Sequence record: NC_048668.1
Length of the DNA: 64,000 nt
Strand: one strand, 5' to 3'
Under the pieces are notes generated by a model, which worked only from the letters and a program-made list of their open reading frames with translations, had not been told where the DNA came from and ran no database searches. The number at the start of each line of letters is the position of its first letter. Positions within the stretch are counted from its first letter, which is position 1. Positions 4,631 through 55,346 of this stretch are shown piece by piece. Position numbers and translations under genes: made by a program.

Positions 4631-5041
4631 ATGAGTAAGAACGAAGAACATCACAATGCGGAAGCGCGCTTAACTGTACAATCTTTCTTCGAGGCCTTGG
4701 GTCTGCGTACTCAACCTAAGTTGCCGGAAGGGATTATTGGTTACAACGGCCAAGTAAACATTTCGTTGCTCCGTGGGATTATTAACGCGCATCCTCTGCG
4801 TCAGTTGATCCAGGTTTCTAAAGCCAAGTCTGACTTCACTAGTTTGCCTATGGCCGTGCAGGATATCGTCAAGGCACTGTCTCGTTATGAAGATAGCGAG
4901 TGGGTACTCACTAAGTTTGGGGTATTCAAGTTTAAGGTGAAGAAGCCTCAGGAAGAGATTCAAACCGTGATTGAAAAATACCGGAACGAGATTCCTAACC
5001 ACGTTTACGACAAACTGAAAAACGCATTGAAGTCGTGGTAA
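4631..5041 (+). CDS. hypothetical protein
   Basis: SD AAGGAG, ATG at 4631. Confidence 0.7.
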   Translation: MSKNEEHHNAEARLTVQSFFEALGLRTQPKLPEGIIGYNGQVNISLLRGIINAHPLRQLIQVSKAKSDFTSLPMAVQDIVKALSRYEDSEWVLTKFGVFKFKVKKPQEEIQTVIEKYRNEIPNHVYDKLKNALKSW

Positions 5042-5115
5042 ACCACTCTCTTTAATTCATTTTTTACGTCGTGTCTTATAGTGTGCTAAAAGCACACAAG
5101 ACATCTCGCAAGAGG

Positions 5116-5187
5116 GGTCACGGCGGAGCCTGTGACTATTAGGGGTTAGAATGACTGAGGAATGTAATGACGAAAGGAATTCCCTAA
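5116..5187 (+). ncRNA. repeated structured RNA element, copy 1
   Basis: GGTCACGGC-GGA-GCC(T)GTGACT bulged hairpin plus second stem GAAT/ATTC; homologous to 46649 and 50169. Confidence 0.6.
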
Positions 5188-5254
5188 GAGTACGGCTAGC
5201 TAAATACCCTAGATGAATTAGTGTGATTATAACTCAATAATCCACGTCTAAGAG

Positions 5255-5614
5255 ATGGAAAATACGATGAGAAGAAACCAAGCAGTAATCGATAAATCAA
5301 TCGAAGAACTGAACGATCTGTGCATTGGTGGCCCAGAGACTAAAGAGAAAACTCTGGCAATCAGCTCTGCTATGATGCAGATCTTTACCAACGGCTTAGG
5401 CTTGATGGTAAGTGCCTCTGAGGAAGGGAAGTATCCTCTGGGCAAATACGATTCATTCGCTGAAGTAAGTTTAGCGTCTAGTCGTATCTACGGTCAGATC
5501 GTAGTCTTCCGTGTACGCATTGGTTGGCAGGACACGACGTTCACTCGATTCGTGTTCCTGGATGAAGCAGGTGCTCCAGCCGCAGCCGTTGATGATATCG
5601 GTACTCCGTACTAA
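5255..5614 (+). CDS. hypothetical protein
   Basis: 119-aa ORF downstream of RNA element. Confidence 0.65.
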   Translation: MENTMRRNQAVIDKSIEELNDLCIGGPETKEKTLAISSAMMQIFTNGLGLMVSASEEGKYPLGKYDSFAEVSLASSRIYGQIVVFRVRIGWQDTTFTRFVFLDEAGAPAAAVDDIGTPY

Positions 5615-5741
5615 GTAAAAATGATCCAGCTCATTCCTCTAACCGGGAGTGGGTTGGGTTATTCCTTTTATTTTTTGACGCTATGTATCCATGGTATAGC
5701 GATTATGCTAGTTTAACTATTGAAAACAAGGGAAGAGAAAC

Positions 5742-6389: not shown

Positions 6390-6509
6390 TTCATTCGACA
6401 TGAGGGAGTTCGCTCCCTCTTTTTGTACAGGAGGATATAAACGCGAAGTGGTAACACTCTCCTCTCGCCAAGGTACTCGTTAAACACGACTACTTGAGGA
6501 AAAAAGAAC

Positions 6510-7179
6510 ATGCGCATGGTATTCTGGACTCTTGTCCTTTGCTTGGTAACATTCAGTTTCCCAGCAACCGCATCTGTATCCGTGAACCAGGCCGGTTGGA
6601 ATAAACACAAAACCGTCTTGCTTTCTACGTCCAAACGTACGGACGTAAACATGATGGATCTAGTCATTTTGGCTAGCATCGAATCAACTATGGGTCAAAA
6701 TCGTCATAACCGTTCCAGCTCCGCCGCAGGTCTGTTTGGGTTCACCGACAGTACGTGGCGTGTAATGGTTAAGCGTTACGGTAAACAGTACGGCATTCGA
6801 CCTGGTACAAGTAAACAAAACCCGCGAGCCAACGCTTTGATGGCTGCGGAAATACATCAAGGAAAATCAACGATATCTTGAGAAGCAACTTCACCGTAAA
6901 GTCGGTATCGAAGAAATCTACATGGCTCACTTGCTCGGGCCTGGAGACGCTGTCAAGATCCTCAAAGCGCGTAACGGTTGTTACGCTTCTTCCGTAACGC
7001 CTAGTGCTGCTCGGGGCAATAAAGCGTTCTTCTACGATAAAGGACGTGCCCGTACTGTAGCAGGATTTAAGCAATACGTTCATTCGAAAGTTAACAGCCA
7101 CCGCAAAGCTTATAAAAGCGAAGTGGTTCTCTTAGCTTACAAACATCAACTCCCCCTAACTTTAGCTGACGCAACTTAA
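6510..7179 (+). CDS. lytic transglycosylase (SLT/phiKZ gp144-like catalytic domain) with N-terminal signal peptide; +1 frameshift near 6852
   Basis: LASIES catalytic Glu, SSAAGLFGF, YMAHLLGPG motifs; deleting one A in GGAAATAC restores AEYIKENQ and joins both ORFs. Confidence 0.8.
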
Positions 7180-12512: not shown

Positions 12513-12543
12513 ATTTTTTACATCTCTTCTGAAGATGTGTAGC
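12513..12543. promoter_or_regulatory. pseudo-palindromic divergent promoter candidate
   Basis: TTTTTTACAT...GATGTGTAG between divergent genes. Confidence 0.4.
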
Positions 12544-12588
12544 AATTACACAGATAAAGTAGTTTTTTCTTATCAGTAGTGAGGAAAT

Positions 12589-13551
12589 ATGCAAACTCGT
12601 AATAGCGTCTCTATCTATGGTTGTGGCGGTGCCGGTATCGACCTGGTAAACCGTCTGCTCGATCAAGACCTCAGTGGTCTGGCTTATGTCAACGCTGCCT
12701 TCGTAGACAGCAGCAAATCCAACTTCAACGGACGCTACGATCCTAAGACGTGTTACGTCCTGGAAGGCGTAGATGGCTCCGGTAAAGAGCGTTCGATCAA
12801 CTACCCTCTGATCGCTCGTGCAGTAGACGATGTTCTGCTGTCACACAAACCATCCGACCTGAACATCCTGGTCTTCTCTGCATCCGGCGGTACTGGTTCA
12901 GTATTCTCACTGAAAATCGCCGAAGCGCTGTGGGAACAAAACAAAGCCGTTCTGCTGTTCGTCGTCGGTTCGACCGAAAGCGGTAAAACCACCGGTAACG
13001 TTCTGGATACTCTGTATTCGATCGATACCATGGCTCGGAAGAAAAACGTCTCTGCGGTTGTCTACTACGACACCAATGGCAGCAACGTCCGTAACTCTGA
13101 AGTCGACATCAACATGCTGACCGGTATGCGTTGGATCCTGGATCTCTACGCAGGTACTCACCACGGCCTTGATAGCGCCGATGTTCTCAACTGGGCTCGT
13201 CCTACTAGCGGCGCCAAAGTAACACCTCAGCTCTGCCTGCTGGACATCACCGAAGATCGCAACGAAGCGATCGAAATCGAAGCACCAATCTCTGTTGCTG
13301 AACTGCACGGTGACGACTATCGTGGTGAAGGTACTATCGCCGCTGACTACAGCGCGTATGGTAACCGTCGCGAAAGTGGTAAAGGTTCTCTGTACTTCAG
13401 CATCTACACCCATGGCCTGGGTTCGCTGATGGATGAACTGAAAACCATCAAGGACGATTACGAGCGTCGTAAGGCCTCTCGTGAGAAACTGACTTCTTCT
13501 GTAATGAAGAACTCTGGGCCGTCCGAAGACGACGGGATGTTTTTCTCCTAA
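12589..13551 (+). CDS. phuZ: PhuZ phage tubulin
   Basis: GCGGAG T1 loop, SASGGTGS tubulin signature, acidic-aromatic C-tail EDDGMFFS. Confidence 0.92.
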   Translation: MQTRNSVSIYGCGGAGIDLVNRLLDQDLSGLAYVNAAFVDSSKSNFNGRYDPKTCYVLEGVDGSGKERSINYPLIARAVDDVLLSHKPSDLNILVFSASGGTGSVFSLKIAEALWEQNKAVLLFVVGSTESGKTTGNVLDTLYSIDTMARKKNVSAVVYYDTNGSNVRNSEVDINMLTGMRWILDLYAGTHHGLDSADVLNWARPTSGAKVTPQLCLLDITEDRNEAIEIEAPISVAELHGDDYRGEGTIAADYSAYGNRRESGKGSLYFSIYTHGLGSLMDELKTIKDDYERRKASREKLTSSVMKNSGPSEDDGMFFS

Positions 13552-22048: not shown

Positions 22049-23884
22049 ATGAGTCTGTCTGACCAAAACGTTAACGAAGCTAAAAACACCCAACGCGCTG
22101 CAGCTGCACAGGGTCAACAACCTCGCGAACAAGCAGGCCGTCGTCTGAACACCAACATCTTCGAAAGCGGCCAACTGGTACAAGCCGGCGTTTCCGGTAA
22201 CGAACTGACCACTTTCATCGAGCGCTTCAACGCTTATCACGACGCAAACAAAGCTGCTCTGTCTGCCGGCGGTCAACTGACCTGGGCCGTAATCCCAGCA
22301 TCTTCTGGCGAAACCAAAATGAAGCTGGATGCAGCTGTCGTTGTCGGTAAAGCCACTACCTCCGAAGGCGTGATCACCACTGCACTGACTCTGCTGTTCA
22401 CCGGCGGCCAGCCTCTGCCGAAGCAAGTCGTAGAGATCAGCAACCGTAACGAGCGTCAGTACTCTGCCGTCGCGAACGATCAGTTCACCGAAGCGTATCA
22501 GAAAAAGCTGACCGAAATCATCAACCGCAAAGCGCCTTACATGGGCGAAGCTGAAAACATCGTTCTGATGGGCGCCGTGGCAGTAACCAACGCGCAACTG
22601 AGCGAAGCGAAGTGTGAAGACCTGATCATCTCCGCGGTGAACTCCGTCTTCGGTTACCTGGGCAACATGCTGCGTACCGAACACTTCTCTCTGACCGATG
22701 CGATCGACTCTCAGCGCAGCGAGTTCGTTTCTCGCGTGATCTACAATCAGGGCGATGCCCATGACGAAATCACCGAGCGTCCTCGTCGTCGCGATCTGGC
22801 CGTCGAAGTATCTCTGGCAACCAAAGGTCAGCGTAACCGTGTGTCTAACGCACTGGAAAACGCTGAAGGCGCAATGGACATCGCAACCAATCGAAGGTTA
22901 CGTTGATCTGCTGTTCCTGGGTCGTCCGGATGGTCAGCAACGTCGTTCTCGCTACCGTTCTCAGCGTGAAGAAGACGCAGCGCGTCAGATCTACGGTAAA
23001 AACCTGGTCATCACCCACATGAAGCACGAAGCTTCTCCCGAGCACCTGTGCCTGGCACTGGCCCAGGATCCCTGTACTGATCAACGAAAACGTTCTGACC
23101 ACTGGCCTGAAGCCAGCCGGCGACAACGCGAAACTGCGTACTCCGGTTGCTCTGACCTACGAGCTGGACGAAGAGTTCGAAGCAGTGCCGGACGTTCTGG
23201 ACGATGCAGAGTGGGCTGACCTGACCGACGTAGTGATCCAACCGGATCAGAACTTCGTAACCGTACTGATCGACGAAACCGGCATCACCACCCAACAGCA
23301 GAAACTGCTGCTGCAAGCGACCGACCGCATGAACCCGAACCGTGACCTGTTCGCAGACATGCTGGTACAAGCGGCTGATAACCTGACCAAAGGCGCCTTC
23401 ATGGAAAGCCTGGGCGCAGCGCGTATCAACCCGCTGGATATCGGCGAACGTCAAGACCCGTATCGTCCTGCTGGGCGAATGGACTGACGACCGTGGCCAA
23501 ATCCGTTCTCTGACCGAAATCGACTACTACGCGATCCTGACTGCCTTCGGCCAGAAAGATCGTCGCATCGTAGAAGACTGGGATCGTTGCCAGAACGATG
23601 TAAGCCTGCCGATCGAAATCCGTCTGGCGAAAATGGAAGAGATCATCGACCAATTCACCGGCGGTTCCTACCGCATCACCGGTCACGGTGTTCCAGTACT
23701 GGTTAACACCCAGTGGCTGTTCACTCTGACCAACGCCGCAGAGCGCGCTGGTATGGTTACTCAGGCTGACGGTATCTATCAGGATACTCGTTTCCGTCGT
23801 GGTTTCCAATCTCAGTACGCTACTTCCGGTTACGCCGGCAAAGCGTTCCGTATGCGTGGTACTGGTCGCAACGATTACTTCTAA
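22049..23884 (+). CDS. chmA: chimallin, nuclear shell protein (about 610 aa after repair of three +1 frameshifts near 22889, 23067, 23461)
   Basis: position between DNA polymerase and RNAP beta' subunit; GYVDL and EIDY motifs; extreme codon bias; repaired size matches. Confidence 0.8.
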
Positions 23885-23985: not shown

Positions 23986-25263
23986 TTGGGTGTTTATCTG
24001 TTAAATCCGGACTATGACAGGGATATCGCAGCTCTGCCTCGTCCTCCAATTATCCTCAATGATATCGACCCGGCGCATTATGAAGGTACTGATCCAGTCA
24101 AAGAACTGACCATGACCGAATATAGCGACGACTTCATTGAGACATTACCGGCGTGTGAGTGTGGCCACACCCATGGTCGGTATAATTCATCGAACGACCC
24201 AAGTATCCCTAACACGGTATGTCCGAAATGTCAGACTGAAGTGATGAGCCCAATCGATCGAGGGTTTAAATCTTCTGTGTGGCTGAGAGCACCTAACGGT
24301 GTTCGTGCGTTCATCCGTATCAATGCGTTGGTCATGTTGCTGAAGAACTTCACCCAGGAGAACTTCTCGGCAATTGAATGGCTCTGTAACACCAAATATA
24401 AGCCAACCAACGATACCAGTGCCACGTTCCGTCGGTTCAAAGAACTGAACATCCCTCGTGGCTATAATCACTTTATCGAGAACTTCGATGACATCCTGGG
24501 AGCGATGGTGGATAGTAAGATATTCAAGCCATCTGCTAACCGTAACGATGCGTTGGTGTATTTCGATAAGTTCAGGGATCTCCTGTTCCCAACTGTCCTC
24601 CCACTACCATCTCGCCGGTCTATCATCACGGAGCTTAGTAACAAAACTCGGTTCTGTGCTGAAGGCTATGCAGATGTCGTCGATGCTGCACGAGCTATTT
24701 ACAGCTTGGTCGGTAAAGATGAACCGCGTTATCAAGTGACTAAGGAATATCACGTATTCCGAGCACTGATGATGTTGGTGAAGTATCGGGAATATATCGA
24801 CAAGAACATCCTGGGTAAGAAAGAAGGCTGGTTCCGTAAACAGATCTATGGATCTCGTACCGGGCCAACTTATCGTGGCGTAGTAACGTCTATCGCGGGA
24901 TCTCACGACTATGAAGAAATGCATATGCCGTGGGGGATTGCGTTAGGGGTTTATCACACCCACTTGATCGGAAAGTTAGTTCGTCGCGGATTCACCATCC
25001 AAGACTCTGAGGATCTACTGATCTCTTCAGTAGGGCGTTATAATCCACTGATCTCCACACTGCTGGATGAGCTGATTGACGAATCTCCGTTTACGACAAT
25101 TAGTGGTAAACGTGGACTGCCTCAGTTGCTGGGTCGAAATCCAACGTTGAACTTACGTTCGATTCAGAACCTGTTTGTCACCAAAATCAAAAGGGACGTG
25201 CACGACAATACTATCGGCCTATCGCTGCTAGTGCTGAAGGCTCCGAACTGTGACTTCGACGGT
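23986..25263 (+). CDS. non-virion RNAP beta' N-terminal subunit (phiKZ gp55-like), exon 1
   Basis: Zn finger CECG...CPKC, RNPTL, ends NCDFDG at the 5' splice site. Confidence 0.88.
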
Positions 25264-25559
25264 AGAAGTAACCCAACTAAGTTGCCGTCTTAAAACTCCT
25301 TTAACTGCTGGGAACTCTTGCTAGGTAGATTGGCTACAACGTAACTGGAAACGGTAAGCGTGAATGCTTGAAAACAATCTAATAGAGACAATCAGCATCC
25401 AAGCTCCTGTAAAATGGAGAAGGTTCAACGACTATCGAAAGCACGTAACACGGATGTGGTAAACGTAGTGAGTAGAGTAGGGGAAACCCGAAACGGGGAG
25501 CACTTGAACGATTCAAGTGAAGATATAGTCTGTTAAGTACTCGGTGCATTTAGCCGAGG
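25264..25559 (+). mobile_element. group I intron without ORF (296 nt)
   Basis: P1 GACGGT/GCCGTC with U-G at splice site; P AACTGCTGGGAA, Q AATCAGCATCC, R GTTCAACGACTA, S AAGATATAGTC; ends in G; splicing restores DFDGD. Confidence 0.9.
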
Positions 25560-46599: not shown

Positions 46600-46648
46600 T
46601 TAGTTAGCTCTCATTTTTTACGTACGTTTCAATTATGTGTCAGAACTT

Positions 46649-46732
46649 GGTCACGGCCCGGAGGGTCTGTGACTATTAGGGGTTTTAGAGTGAACTAGGA
46701 TGACCAAAGGGAAGACGAAGTGAGCTCCCTAA
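46649..46732 (+). ncRNA. repeated structured RNA element, copy 2
   Basis: GGTCACGGCCC-GGA-GGGTC(T)GTGACT; GAGT/GCTC stem. Confidence 0.6.
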
Positions 46733-46851
46733 ACGCGTGGATAATTAACCCCATTTAAACTAAATTGATATTCACTGGTAGATTAAGTTCTACTGGTGAT
46801 TATTGATCTATTTTGTAAAATTACCAATATACCTCCATTGGATCTTAGGTA

Positions 46852-50113: not shown

Positions 50114-50168
50114 TAATCTCTCATTTTTTACGTCACTTCTCTTTAGTTTGTCAAAACAATACCACTCA

Positions 50169-50247
50169 GGTCACGGCCGTAGGCCTGTGACTAATAAGTA
50201 CCCGTATGACTGAAGAACGTAGTGATGAAAGGAATACATCTTGGGTA
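50169..50247 (+). ncRNA. repeated structured RNA element, copy 3
   Basis: GGTCACGGCC-GTA-GGCC(T)GTGACT; GTAT/ATAC stem. Confidence 0.6.
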
Positions 50248-52934: not shown

Positions 52935-53072
52935 TTTAGATCTTTTTTTACGCAACAAGTTTAAGTATGTAGAAGCTGCATCAAGTAATCATTTAGTTCA
53001 ATTAACTCCAGGGTCGATTGTCGGTAACTAAGTGAGATTCAGCTACAAGCGGGGATGGATCCCCACTAAGTA

Positions 53073-53249: not shown

Positions 53250-53334
53250 GGTAGGTTACTCAAGCGGCAACGAGAACAGACTGTAAATCTGTTGCCTTCG
53301 GGCTTCGATGGTTCGAGTCCATCACCTACCACCA
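53250..53334 (+). tRNA. trnY: tRNA-Tyr(GTA)
   Basis: acceptor GGTAGGT/ACCTACC, anticodon arm ACAGA-CTGTAAA-TCTGT, long variable arm, TTCGAGT T loop, encoded ACCA. Confidence 0.95.
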
Positions 53335-53341
53335 AAACAAT

Positions 53342-53420
53342 GAACCGAGTAGCTCAACTGAATAGAGCACCGTCCCGCTAAGACGGAGGTTAGAGGTTTA
53401 AGTCCTTTCTCTGGTTCCCA
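53342..53420 (+). tRNA. atypical/pseudo tRNA: Arg-like body, GCT anticodon
   Basis: D arm AGCTCAACTGAATAGAGC, arm CCGTC-CCGCTAA-GACGG, T loop TTTAAGT, bulged acceptor, CCA. Confidence 0.65.
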
Positions 53421-54869: not shown

Positions 54870-55346
54870 ATGAAATTCATACTGGCATTGAATCCTAAAG
54901 ATCCGGCAATTAAAGGTTACGAATCAGCTCTGCTTAAGATGATCCAGATTATGGATAAACGAGAAGCTACTTACTGGAAAGAGTCAGCTAACTTAGATAT
55001 CCTTAGTCGCGAGATGTAGTGTAAAACCTTAGAGGAACGTTGGGTAGATGATACTCAAATACTAATGCTCCTTGTGAGAGGTAATCCTGTAGGTTTCGTT
55101 GAGTACACGACCGCGGTAGTTAACGCTAGTTCTAAGTGGCTTTCTATATGTTATCTGTACGTACAACGAGAGTACAGAGGGTTTGGATATGGATCTGCAC
55201 TAGTTGATCAAGTAAGGAACTTTGCCAAGATCCAACAAGTAGATCAGTTATCACTTTCAGTAAAGTCCAGAAATAAACGAGCCATTAAGTTTTACAAGAG
55301 ATACGGTTTCTCGGAACAGACTAAGTACTTCTGTATGAAACCTTAA
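54870..55346 (+). pseudogene. GNAT acetyltransferase with in-frame TAG at 55017-55019
   Basis: LYVQREYRGFGYGSAL motif; same frame on both sides of the TAG. Confidence 0.6.

What the first reader, a model, noticed from the sequence alone, without database searches (positions are those of the whole stretch)
5061..5187. Three-copy covarying structured RNA element ahead of accessory operons (copy 1 and overall model)
Seen: the same non-coding module occurs at 5116-5187, 46649-46732 and 50169-50247. Hairpin 1 is GGTCACGG(n)-3-nt loop-(n)CC/TC-bulged T-GTGACT. The upper stem length varies, but pairing and the single bulged U are kept. Domain 2 is a covarying 4-bp stem (GAAT/ATTC, GAGT/GCTC, GTAT/ATAC) with GA on both inner sides. 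It encloses CTGANGA...RTGAYGA-AAG (copies 1 and 3) and stacks on an outer stem (TTAGG/CCTAA or TACCC/GGGTA). Each copy lies about 30-50 nt after a TCATTTTTTACGT motif and upstream of an accessory gene. Inference: a phage-specific RNA motif, such as an mRNA leader (translation, stability, or export from the phage nucleus), an sRNA, or a ribozyme-like fold. CUGA plus RUGAYGA resembles box D/box C kink-loop elements. I do not recognise it as a described family.
Basis: partly seen in the sequence, partly recalled or inferred. Interest (0 to 1): 0.8.

Follow-up and report, generated by a model that had tools for sequence, protein, structure and literature searches.

The report
Three-copy structured leader RNA, jumbo phage
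Three operons of a nucleus-forming Serratia jumbo phage begin with the same small folded RNA module (a bulged hairpin plus a hairpin full of G·A mismatches) just after an early-promoter-like motif; it is real, conserved, matches no described RNA family, and its function is still unknown.

Summary
The window is the last 64 kb of Serratia phage 2050HW (Moabitevirus; it encodes PhuZ and a chimallin homolog). The three copies are real and are the only ones in the 276-kb genome.

Each copy lies 25-46 nt after an AT-rich motif that also precedes the chimallin, PhuZ and tRNA genes. Each sits in a long leader, 84-173 nt before an ORFan gene.

- **Hairpin P1** (bulged U, GNA triloop) is 100% identical between 2050HW and the diverged phage Totoro. 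It has two compensatory base pairs in Klebsiella jumbo phages at the syntenic site.
- **Domain 2** is not a box C/D kink-turn. It is one continuous hairpin in which Watson-Crick pairs covary between invariant tandem G·A/A·G steps. Seven substitutions separate the Totoro and 2050HW copy-1 hairpins: three compensatory pairs plus one loop base.
- A 13-nt apical motif (N-GA-NN-RNA-N'N'-GA-N') is kept in 7 of 7 lineages.

There is no Rfam match, no conserved small ORF and no hammerhead core. G·U pairs place the fold on the transcribed strand.

Best reading: a cis-acting recognition element in the leader of putatively early transcripts. That it is a real structured leader RNA is well supported; the mechanism (a protein operator, or an antitermination, stabiliser or processing element) is inferred. 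It is new, confined to three genera, and of moderate interest.

The parts
5057..5069 (+). AT-rich promoter-like motif TCATTTTTTACGT, copy 1 (followed about 14 nt later by TGTG)
   Evidence: Exact in all 3 copies. The same T-run-AC ... TGT motif precedes PhuZ (12511), the chimallin homolog (21788) and the tRNA region (52941). Only 7 such sites lie on the + strand of the whole genome.
5081..5097 (+). Small 7-bp hairpin GUGUGCU-AAA-AGCACAC between the motif and P1 (copy 1 only)
   Evidence: Read from the sequence. 95.7% identical in Totoro. Similar small hairpins start at the TGT of the PhuZ, tRNA and copy-3 sites.
5116..5137 (+). P1, copy 1: 6-bp lower stem, bulged U, 3-bp upper stem, GGA triloop
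   Evidence: -10.4 kcal/mol, z = -2.7. 100% identical in Totoro. The ortholog in FBKp24 has 2 compensatory pairs.
5138..5148 (+). Linker AUUAGGGGUUA; UAUUAGGGG is shared with FBKp24 and Centimanus
5149..5182 (+). GA-rich hairpin, copy 1: 4 bp, GA/GA, 2 bp, GA/GAA, 1 bp, GA/GA, 2 bp, GUA triloop
   Evidence: 9 of 9 Watson-Crick pairs are kept in 3 sequences and 5 of them show compensatory changes; all GA positions are invariant. RNAfold finds the same fold on its own.
5183..5266 (+). Rest of the copy-1 leader up to the gp283 start codon; poorly conserved
   Evidence: 60.5% identity to Totoro, against 100% for P1.
46611..46623 (+). Promoter-like motif, copy 2
46649..46674 (+). P1, copy 2 (5-bp upper stem with one G·U, GGA triloop)
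   Evidence: 100% identical in Totoro.
46688..46727 (+). GA-rich hairpin, copy 2: as in copy 1 plus one extra '1 bp + GA/GA' step; AAA triloop
   Evidence: -8.9 kcal/mol, z = -2.5. Natural variants: U·G to U-A (Haymo, Yaphecito), A-U to G·U (Kodama), one disruptive C to A (ParM-25).
46772..46799 (+). 11-bp hairpin further down the copy-2 leader (weak U-tail)
   Evidence: Kept in Totoro.
50121..50133 (+). Promoter-like motif, copy 3
50169..50192 (+). P1, copy 3 (4-bp upper stem, GUA triloop)
   Evidence: z = -3.8.
50204..50237 (+). GA-rich hairpin, copy 3
   Evidence: P1 + linker + hairpin are 69/69 identical in Totoro, while the protein encoded downstream is only 40% identical.

Best explanation
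The three sites are paralogous copies of a structured RNA module in the 5' leader of three operons of ORFan genes. [quoted passage not shown] P1 is a short hairpin whose core (CACGGC ... GCC-U-GUG, with a bulged U) is fixed in sequence, while its base and top covary. The second part is a rod-like hairpin in which invariant tandem G·A/A·G steps alternate with covarying Watson-Crick pairs, capped by a 2-bp stem and an R-N-A triloop. Most likely mechanism (inferred, not shown): the module acts in cis as a shared recognition site for one trans-acting factor, most plausibly a phage-encoded RNA-binding protein. That factor would read the fixed nucleotides around the bulged U and the widened G·A helix, and so put the three operons under common post-transcriptional control of translation or mRNA lifetime. 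Shown: the copies, their strand, the fold, the selection on it, and its position after the motif. Inferred: that the motif is an early promoter, where the 5' end lies, that a protein binds, and what follows from binding. My confidence that this is a real, selected, RNA-level leader structure is about 0.85. My confidence in the protein-operator mechanism specifically is about 0.3. The figure below is a compromise between the two.
For: Copies and specificity. Fold of domain 2: 99% of cells paired and 5 of 7 pairs with compensatory changes over 7 sequences. 9 of 9 pairs are kept and 5 covary among copy 1, Totoro copy 1 and copy 3, with every GA invariant. Totoro and 2050HW copy 1 differ at 7 positions: 3 compensatory pairs plus 1 loop base. 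The apical 13-nt motif is kept in 7 of 7 lineages with 21 of 21 cells paired. P1 is 100% conserved between 2050HW and Totoro while flanking genes are 75-94% identical in DNA. Two compensatory pairs lie at the P1 base in FBKp24, Centimanus and KpLz-2_45 at the syntenic site. Strand: several G·U pairs would be A·C on the other strand, and all neighbouring genes are on +. Promoter inference: the same motif lies upstream of the chimallin and PhuZ homologs. The jumbo-phage literature describes early promoters as roughly 10-nt AT-rich conserved motifs near -10, or as a T-rich element plus an extended -10 (PMC7598289, PMC8244752). The downstream genes are unrelated to each other, so the module is not part of a duplicated gene. 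A hairpin with fixed sequence in one part and covariation elsewhere is what protein operators in phage mRNAs look like (general knowledge: MS2/PP7 coat operators, lambda boxB).
Against: No transcript data exist for these phages, so the 5' end, the timing and even transcription from the motif are inferred. No partner protein is identified. The module ends 84-173 nt before the start codons, which is far for a classic translational operator. In the Klebsiella-phage ortholog of copy 1 the GA hairpin is replaced by a short ordinary hairpin. In the second Klebsiella-phage leader P1 is degenerate, so the two parts are separable and may not work as one unit. Covariation rests on few independent lineages (3 paralogs in 2 Moabitevirus lineages, plus 2-3 Klebsiella-phage lineages). 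The GA hairpin is weak by nearest-neighbour energy (-2.4 to -8.9 kcal/mol).
Confidence: 0.4

Rival explanations
1. Promoter-proximal RNA that acts on the transcribing phage RNA polymerase (put/nut-like processive antitermination or pausing). The nascent two-hairpin RNA would bind the polymerase, or load a factor on it, so that it reads through the terminators inside the downstream operons.
For: The module lies 25-46 nt after a promoter-like motif, at the head of multi-gene units, in several copies per genome. It consists of two hairpins, one with a fixed sequence. Terminator-like hairpins follow gp283 (5620-5663) and gp284 (6402-6419), and one lies inside the copy-2 leader (46772-46799). HK022 put and lambda nut have this layout (own knowledge).
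Against: Only 3 of about 7 sites of this promoter class carry it. No similarity to any known antitermination RNA in Rfam. The jumbo-phage polymerases are very different from the host enzyme that put and nut act on. Nothing here tests read-through.
Confidence: 0.15
2. A 5' stabiliser or RNase processing signal. P1 and the GA hairpin would protect the 5' part of the mRNA from 5'-end-dependent decay, or mark a cleavage site that separates these cistrons from read-through transcripts of the upstream genes.
For: No terminator lies between the upstream gene and the motif (5041 to 5057), so read-through from upstream is likely. In copy 2 and in the Klebsiella-phage orthologs P1 starts only 7-10 nt after the TGT of the motif, so it could be near the 5' end. 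Stable 5' hairpins are known stabilisers (own knowledge).
Against: Simple protection does not need an invariant sequence, a conserved bulged U or invariant G·A steps. The distance from the motif to P1 varies from 25 to 46 nt.
Confidence: 0.15
3. Independent small RNAs (5'UTR-derived or stand-alone) that act in trans.
For: 5'UTR-derived sRNAs made by premature termination are reported in 201phi2-1 and phiKZ (PMC11512511). The copy-2 leader has a terminator-like hairpin about 45 nt after the module.
Against: Copies 1 and 3 have no terminator before the gene. No conserved single-stranded seed region is evident. The three copies differ mainly in paired positions.
Confidence: 0.08
4. A DNA-level element: + strand hairpins in single-stranded DNA (priming, replication or packaging signal, or hairpin promoter), or simply the repeated core of a mobile promoter cassette that promotes recombination.
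For: C-GNA-G triloops (FBKp24 has GCGAAGC) and tandem sheared G·A are also very stable in DNA. N4 virion RNAP uses 3-nt-loop DNA hairpins as promoters (own knowledge). In Totoro sequence identity drops from 100% to about 60% right at the 3' end of copy 3. An extra HTH gene sits after copy 2, and gp283 sits between the module and the gp284 homolog relative to FBKp24.
Against: Changes pass through G·U intermediates, as expected for RNA. The template strand would carry A·C and pyrimidine mismatches. The orientation always matches transcription. The variable spacing between half-sites (10, 12, 14 nt) with complementary fillers argues against a double-stranded operator. The mosaic boundaries can be a by-product of conserved repeats.
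Confidence: 0.08
5. A box C/D-type kink-turn, a hammerhead-like ribozyme, a riboswitch, or a tiny upstream ORF.
For: The letters CUGA, UGAUGA-like and GAAA are present in copies 1 and 3. ATG-ACT-GAR-GAA opens short ORFs in copies 1 and 3.
Against: No 3-nt bulge. Box and core letters change in Totoro copy 1 and in copy 2. No Rfam ribozyme, riboswitch or snoRNA hit even at E up to 10. The ORF stops at codon 5 in Totoro copy 1, is 2 codons long in copy 2, and substitutions follow pairing rather than codon position. No expression platform lies next to the module.
Confidence: 0.04

Closest known systems
HK022 put / lambda nut sites (promoter-proximal antitermination RNAs)
   Same: Small RNA hairpin modules placed shortly after early promoters, present in several copies per phage genome, acting in cis. 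One hairpin has fixed recognition nucleotides.
   Different: No sequence or Rfam relation. Those sites act on host RNAP with or without Nus/N factors, whereas this phage uses its own multisubunit RNAPs. Antitermination is not tested here. G·A-rich helix architecture is not, to my knowledge, a feature of put or nut (not tested here).
PeSL cassettes of T4-type phages (promoter-early + stem-loop repeats; own knowledge, Arbiol et al. 2010)
   Same: A repeated early promoter plus stem-loop module ahead of variable accessory ORFs. Mosaic boundaries and gene insertions occur next to the repeats.
   Different: PeSLs carry sigma-70 type early promoters and simple stem-loops. Here the motif is not sigma-70-like. 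The RNA fold is elaborate and under strong structure-preserving selection.
Box C/D and other kink-turn / k-loop motifs
   Same: Tandem 5'-GA-3'/5'-GA-3' steps next to Watson-Crick stems. CUGA and UGAUGA-like letters occur in two copies.
   Different: No 3-nt bulge. The G·A steps are flanked by base pairs on both sides and repeated 3-4 times along one helix. The box letters are not conserved. No L7Ae-family protein is known in the host (own knowledge).
Protein-binding operator hairpins of phage mRNAs (MS2/PP7 coat operators, lambda boxB, T4 gp43 operator)
   Same: A short hairpin with a single bulged nucleotide, a small loop and fixed bases at the recognition face, while other pairs covary. This is what P1 works like in my best explanation.
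   Different: No sequence relation. It is 84-173 nt from the start codon rather than overlapping it. The partner is unknown.
5'UTR-derived conserved sRNA of 201phi2-1 / phiKZ (sRNA005, PMC11512511)
   Same: A conserved structured RNA in the leader of a gene of nucleus-forming jumbo phages, at a syntenic position across genera, with unknown function.
   Different: Different locus (tail gene) and different phages. It is defined by premature termination. Sequence relation was not tested here.

Membership tests
Any Rfam 15 family | Match to a curated covariance model | tested here: not met
   No match over the three copies at gathering score or at E up to 10. The FBKp24 leader gives only noise (E 0.35-4, 13-16 bits against cut-offs of 56-176).
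Box C/D kink-turn | Tandem sheared G·A / A·G pairs | tested here: inconclusive
   GA faces GA on the two strands at 3-4 places and is invariant. The pair geometry cannot be tested with sequence tools.
Box C/D kink-turn | 3-nt bulge on the 5' strand before the G·A pairs, with the other strand continuous | tested here: not met
   The G·A steps are flanked by covarying Watson-Crick pairs on both sides. The only asymmetry is one bulged A.
Box C/D kink-turn | Conserved box C (RUGAUGA) and box D (CUGA) | tested here: not met
   Totoro copy 1 has CCGA and AGGAUGA. Copy 2 has ACUA and no RUGAUGA at that place.
Hammerhead ribozyme | Invariant core CUGANGA ... GAAA around a three-way junction with a cleavage site | tested here: not met
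   U4 becomes C in Totoro copy 1. The A14 position is C or U. The fold is a single hairpin rather than a junction. There is no Rfam hammerhead hit.
Riboswitch | Conserved aptamer directly coupled to an expression platform (terminator or SD-sequestering helix) | tested here: not met
   84, 173 and 102 nt of poorly conserved leader lie between the module and the start codon. There is no terminator in copies 1 and 3. Ligand binding is not testable here.
put/nut-type antitermination RNA | Location shortly after an early promoter; hairpin module acting in cis | tested here: inconclusive
   The position after a promoter-like motif is met. That the motif is a promoter is inferred from its presence before the chimallin and PhuZ homologs and from the literature (PMC7598289).
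put/nut-type antitermination RNA | Makes RNAP resistant to downstream terminators | not testable with these tools
   Terminator-like hairpins exist downstream, but read-through needs experiments.
PeSL-type mobile promoter cassette | Repeated promoter + stem-loop next to variable ORFs and mosaic junctions | tested here: met
   Three repeats. The identity break falls at the 3' end of copy 3. There is an extra HTH gene after copy 2 in Totoro, and gp283 is inserted relative to FBKp24.
PeSL-type mobile promoter cassette | Host sigma-70 early promoter | tested here: not met
   No sigma-70-type hit at the three motifs. Promoter-like hits in the regions are fewer than in shuffles.
Small coding ORF (leader peptide) | Open frame kept among orthologs and paralogs, codon-like substitution pattern | tested here: not met
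   The frame has 21 codons in 2050HW copy 1, 4 in Totoro copy 1 and 2 in copy 2. Substitutions come as compensatory pairs.

The most novel reading that the evidence does not exclude
The module is an address label on a subset of early transcripts of a nucleus-forming phage. A phage protein would read the P1 bulged hairpin and the G·A rod and route these mRNAs to a compartment-specific fate: release from the early infection vesicle or the phage nucleus, or preferential loading on ribosomes. That would be a first cis-acting RNA signal for mRNA trafficking in a bacterial virus.
Probability: 0.1. Interest if true: 0.85.

Novelty: new variant of a known kind. Interest (0 to 1): 0.55.

Why it matters
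Nucleus-forming jumbo phages transcribe with their own polymerases and must control and move their mRNAs across protein shells. Almost nothing is known about cis-acting RNA signals in them. This is a compact, clearly selected RNA fold that marks three operons behind a promoter class shared with the chimallin and PhuZ genes. It has separable parts (a sequence-fixed bulged hairpin and a helix built from repeated G·A steps) that can be mutated cleanly. It offers an experimental handle for finding an RNA-binding regulator or an RNAP-modifying RNA in this phage group. The G·A rod is also an unusual structural motif in its own right. The limits are that it is confined to three genera, the operons it heads are all ORFans, and no function is shown.

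Tried and rejected
1. Pattern scans of public collections found nothing beyond chance:
   - IMG/VR with the loose P1 pattern gave 120 chance hits.
   - The stricter P1 pattern returned only the 2050HW contig plus one GC-rich coding chance hit.
   - The cross-genus core pattern returned only the 2050HW and FBKp24 contigs.
   - The metagenome scan gave 4 chance hits with no hairpin.
2. The search for related loci with gp345 and gp283 returned only 2050HW itself.
3. Pfam, PHROGs and NCBIfam gave nothing for 15 flanking and operon proteins. The downstream genes are not paralogs.
4. Model R1 does not retrieve the second FBKp24 leader. Its relation to the Moabitevirus module therefore rests on synteny, shared short strings (GUGACUAUUA, UUAGAGUGA), an independently predicted GA-interrupted hairpin and covariation within the Klebsiella phages. 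It should be treated as probable, not proven.
5. The PhiEaH1 syntenic gap has no homolog.
6. The FBKp24 'promoter' features are PhagePromoter predictions of sigma-70 type and were no help.
7. A k-mer over-representation scan for a genome-wide promoter consensus was uninformative.
8. The proximal outer stem (TTAGG/CCTAA) was considered as part of the fold and downgraded. It is broken in Totoro copies 1 and 2, where a more distal CCCUA could pair instead.
9. The literature search found no paper on this element or on transcription of these phages.

Full report
**What the window is.** A 5-kb piece matches Serratia phage vB_SmaM_2050HW at 100% identity. Window position equals record position minus 212025 in NC_048668.1, genus Moabitevirus. 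The phage encodes PhuZ tubulin (window 12589-13551), a chimallin homolog (about 22049-23884) and split multisubunit RNA polymerase genes. It therefore belongs with the nucleus-forming jumbo phages.

**Check of the observation.**
- The P1 pattern occurs three times, with none expected by chance.
- TCATTTTTTACGT is exact at 5057, 46611 and 50121.
- All three copies lie in unusually long gaps (225-300 nt) between + strand genes: gp282|gp283, gp338|gp339 and gp344|gp345.
- A covariance model built from seven sequences finds the three copies at E = 1e-15 to 1e-26. It finds nothing else credible in the window or in the other 212 kb of the genome.

The module therefore has exactly three copies per genome, all inside this window. 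Every sequenced Moabitevirus genome has the same three.

**Anatomy of P1.** P1 has a 6-bp lower stem (GGUCAC/GUGACU), a bulged U, an upper stem of 3, 5 or 4 bp that differs among copies but stays complementary, and a GGA, GGA or GUA triloop.

**Anatomy of domain 2.** Domain 2 is not two boxes around a loop. Read through, copy 1 (5149-5182) runs as follows: 4 bp, GA facing GA, 2 bp, GA facing GAA, 1 bp, GA facing GA, 2 bp, GUA triloop. RNAfold finds this fold on its own.
- Among copy 1, its Totoro ortholog and copy 3, all 9 Watson-Crick pairs are kept and 5 show compensatory double changes. All twelve G and A of the G·A steps are invariant.
- The Totoro and 2050HW versions of copy 1 differ at seven positions in these 34 nt. 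Six of them form three compensatory pairs and the seventh is the middle loop base.
- Copy 2 has the same plan with one more '1 bp + GA/GA' step.
- Over seven sequences, 99% of cells are paired and 5 of 7 shared pairs covary. Sliding the partners by 1-3 columns drops pairing to 30-41%.
- Natural single variants mostly fit: U·G to U-A in Haymo and Yaphecito, and A-U to G·U in Kodama. One C to A change in ParM-25 breaks the closing pair. In Totoro copy 2 one pair becomes G·G.
- G·U pairs occur at several places, so the folded strand is the + strand, which is the mRNA sense.

**The outer stem.** I do not count it as established.

**Context.** The T-run motif followed about 14-16 nt later by TGT also lies upstream of PhuZ (12511), the chimallin homolog (21788) and the tRNA region (52941). 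Only seven such sites are on the + strand of the whole genome, six of them in this window.

FBKp24 has the same kind of motif before its chimallin gene and before its copy of the element. [quoted passage not shown] For phiKZ they are described as a T-rich element upstream of -19 plus an extended -10 (PMC8244752).

I therefore infer that the three modules sit 20-45 nt into transcripts from a small class of early-type promoters. No transcript data exist for these phages, so this is an inference.

The genes behind the modules are ORFans with no Pfam, PHROG or NCBIfam match. They are not related to each other. The module ends 84, 173 and 102 nt before the start codons. That part of the leader is only 60-76% identical to Totoro, against 100% for P1.

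**Relatives: the syntenic copy-1 site.** Blastn finds the module only in Moabitevirus. The covariance model, however, hit the syntenic gap of Klebsiella phage FBKp24 (Maaswegvirus), just before the gp284 homolog, which is followed by the transglycosylase gene, on the same side of PhuZ.
- There P1 is CGCAC-GGC-GAA-GCC-U-GUGCG. Its core, bulged U, upper stem and GNA loop are kept. The two lowest real pairs are changed on both sides, and the following UAUUAGGGG is kept.
- Centimanus, KpLz-2_45 (Siatvirus) and LPKP23 have it too.
- In these phages the GA hairpin is replaced by a short hairpin that covaries (GGGGC/GCCCC, GGUGAC/GUCACC, GACC/GGUC). A 9-bp hairpin follows with 6 of 9 pairs compensatory.

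**Relatives: a second Klebsiella-phage leader.** A second leader lies in the region syntenic with copies 2 and 3 (FBKp24 54925-55290). It has a similar promoter-like motif and a degenerate P1 that keeps GUGACUAUUA. It also has a hairpin interrupted by GA/GA and GA/GAA steps, which RNAfold predicts unaided. In KpLz-2_45 and LPKP23 the lower G·A step is replaced by Watson-Crick GA/UC and the neighbouring pairs covary.

The apical 13 nt (one pair, GA, two pairs, R-N-A loop, two pairs, GA, one pair) are kept in all seven lineages. 21 of 21 cells are paired, all three pairs covary and the GA positions are invariant.

Model R1 does not retrieve this second leader. Its homology is therefore probable rather than shown.

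**Where it is absent.** The syntenic gap of Erwinia phage PhiEaH1 has nothing similar. IMG/VR and the metagenome collection hold no further relatives with these patterns.

**Selection and mosaicism.** P1 is identical between 2050HW and Totoro in all three copies. In copy 3 the 69 nt from P1 to the end of the GA hairpin are identical, although the protein encoded downstream is only 40% identical. Identity drops at the 3' edge of the module. Totoro carries an extra HTH gene between the copy-2 leader and the gp339 homolog. Moabitevirus has gp283 between the copy-1 leader and the gp284 homolog, whereas FBKp24 does not. The promoter-leader unit is thus kept while its cargo changes.

**What it is not.**
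- It matches no Rfam family, even at E up to 10.
- It is not a kink-turn. There is no 3-nt bulge, and the box letters are not kept.
- It is not a hammerhead. The core letters vary, and the fold is a hairpin rather than a junction.
- It is not a riboswitch of the usual build, because no adjacent expression platform exists.
- It is not a leader peptide. The short ORFs are not conserved, and substitutions follow pairing.
- It is not a double-stranded operator. The spacing between half-sites varies (10, 12, 14 nt) with complementary fillers, and the bulge and G·U pairs are asymmetric.

**Mechanism.**
- Shown: a strand-specific, selected RNA fold in three leaders behind a shared motif.
- Inferred: that it is read by a trans-acting factor.
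- P1 shows a fixed sequence around the bulged U with covariation at the base and top, which is typical of protein operators.
- A helix with invariant G·A steps between covarying pairs points to a specific shape rather than to mere stability. Its nearest-neighbour energy is only -2.4 to -8.9 kcal/mol.
- I put about 0.3 on a shared post-transcriptional operator.
- About 0.15 each goes to an RNAP-directed (put/nut-like) element and to a stabiliser or processing signal.
- About 0.08 each goes to an sRNA and to a DNA-level hairpin or recombination cassette.
- The rest is left for mechanisms not listed here.
- The two parts are separable in the Klebsiella phages, which weakens any model that needs both.

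**Novelty and limits.** The module is an undescribed RNA family of a known general kind (structured, promoter-proximal phage leaders) with an unusual G·A-rich helix. It is confined to three related genera. The evidence base is small: three paralogs, two Moabitevirus lineages and two or three Klebsiella-phage lineages. The count-based controls do not correct for relatedness. About 200 kb of FBKp24 and the other Klebsiella-phage genomes were not scanned.

Noticed in passing
window 22049-23884 (+): The chimallin (nuclear shell) homolog matches FBKp24 gp330 in four pieces lying in three different reading frames. RefSeq annotates three separate hypothetical CDS here (gp310-312). This is either frameshift errors in this assembly or a truly interrupted gene. 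Many other genes of the record are also split (RNAP subunits, ligase x3, SbcC x2, DnaB x2).
   Followed up: partly
window 25240-25549 (+): Group I intron (Rfam RF00028, 58 bits, E 4e-12). It lies between the annotated 'RNA polymerase beta subunit' gp313 (ends 25293) and 'RpoBC' gp314 (starts 25563), so it is an intron in a phage RNAP subunit gene.
   Followed up: partly
window 53250-53416 (+): tRNA-Tyr (GTA) at 53250-53334 by ARAGORN and Rfam. A second Rfam tRNA hit at 53343-53416 (41 bits) is not called by ARAGORN. Both follow a promoter-like T-run site at 52941.
   Followed up: no
window 12511, 21788, 52941 (+); record 103183: The same T-run-AC ... TGT promoter-like motif occurs without the RNA module before PhuZ, the chimallin homolog, the tRNA region and one more site. 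There are only 7 such sites on the + strand of the 276-kb genome. A looser family, CTCTTTT-ATTTTTTA, occurs at about 12-15 sites.
   Followed up: partly
window 5081-5097, 12531-12547, 52964-52976, 50145-50156: In several of these sites the TGT(G) of the motif is the 5' arm of a small hairpin. Copy 1 has GUGUGCU/AGCACAC, PhuZ has UGUGUA/UACACA, the tRNA site has UGUAG/CUGCA, and copy 3 has UUGU/ACAA. It is unclear whether this belongs to the promoter or to the 5' end of the RNA.
   Followed up: no
L153:44925-45290 (-) and L154/L155:215-560: The second Klebsiella-phage leader (about 350 nt) has a stretch of about 75 nt that is nearly identical between FBKp24 and KpLz-2_45. It forms two hairpins, GGGAGUA-AUA-CUCC.. 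and GUAAUC...GAUUAC. The string GUCGUUGACCUUGAC is shared between the two FBKp24 leaders; the KpLz-2_45/LPKP23 copy-1 leaders keep only GUUGACCUUGAC. A short ORF starts there but is not conserved in length.
   Followed up: partly
L124:1808-2551 (Totoro): Totoro has an extra 247-aa protein with two HTH domains (Pfam HTH_3, HTH_26) inserted directly behind the copy-2 leader. It is absent from 2050HW.
   Followed up: partly
window 6510-7179 (+): The transglycosylase/endolysin homolog is annotated as two CDS (gp285, gp286) in 2050HW but as one gene in Totoro, FBKp24 and Moabite. This is another probable frameshift in this assembly.
   Followed up: no
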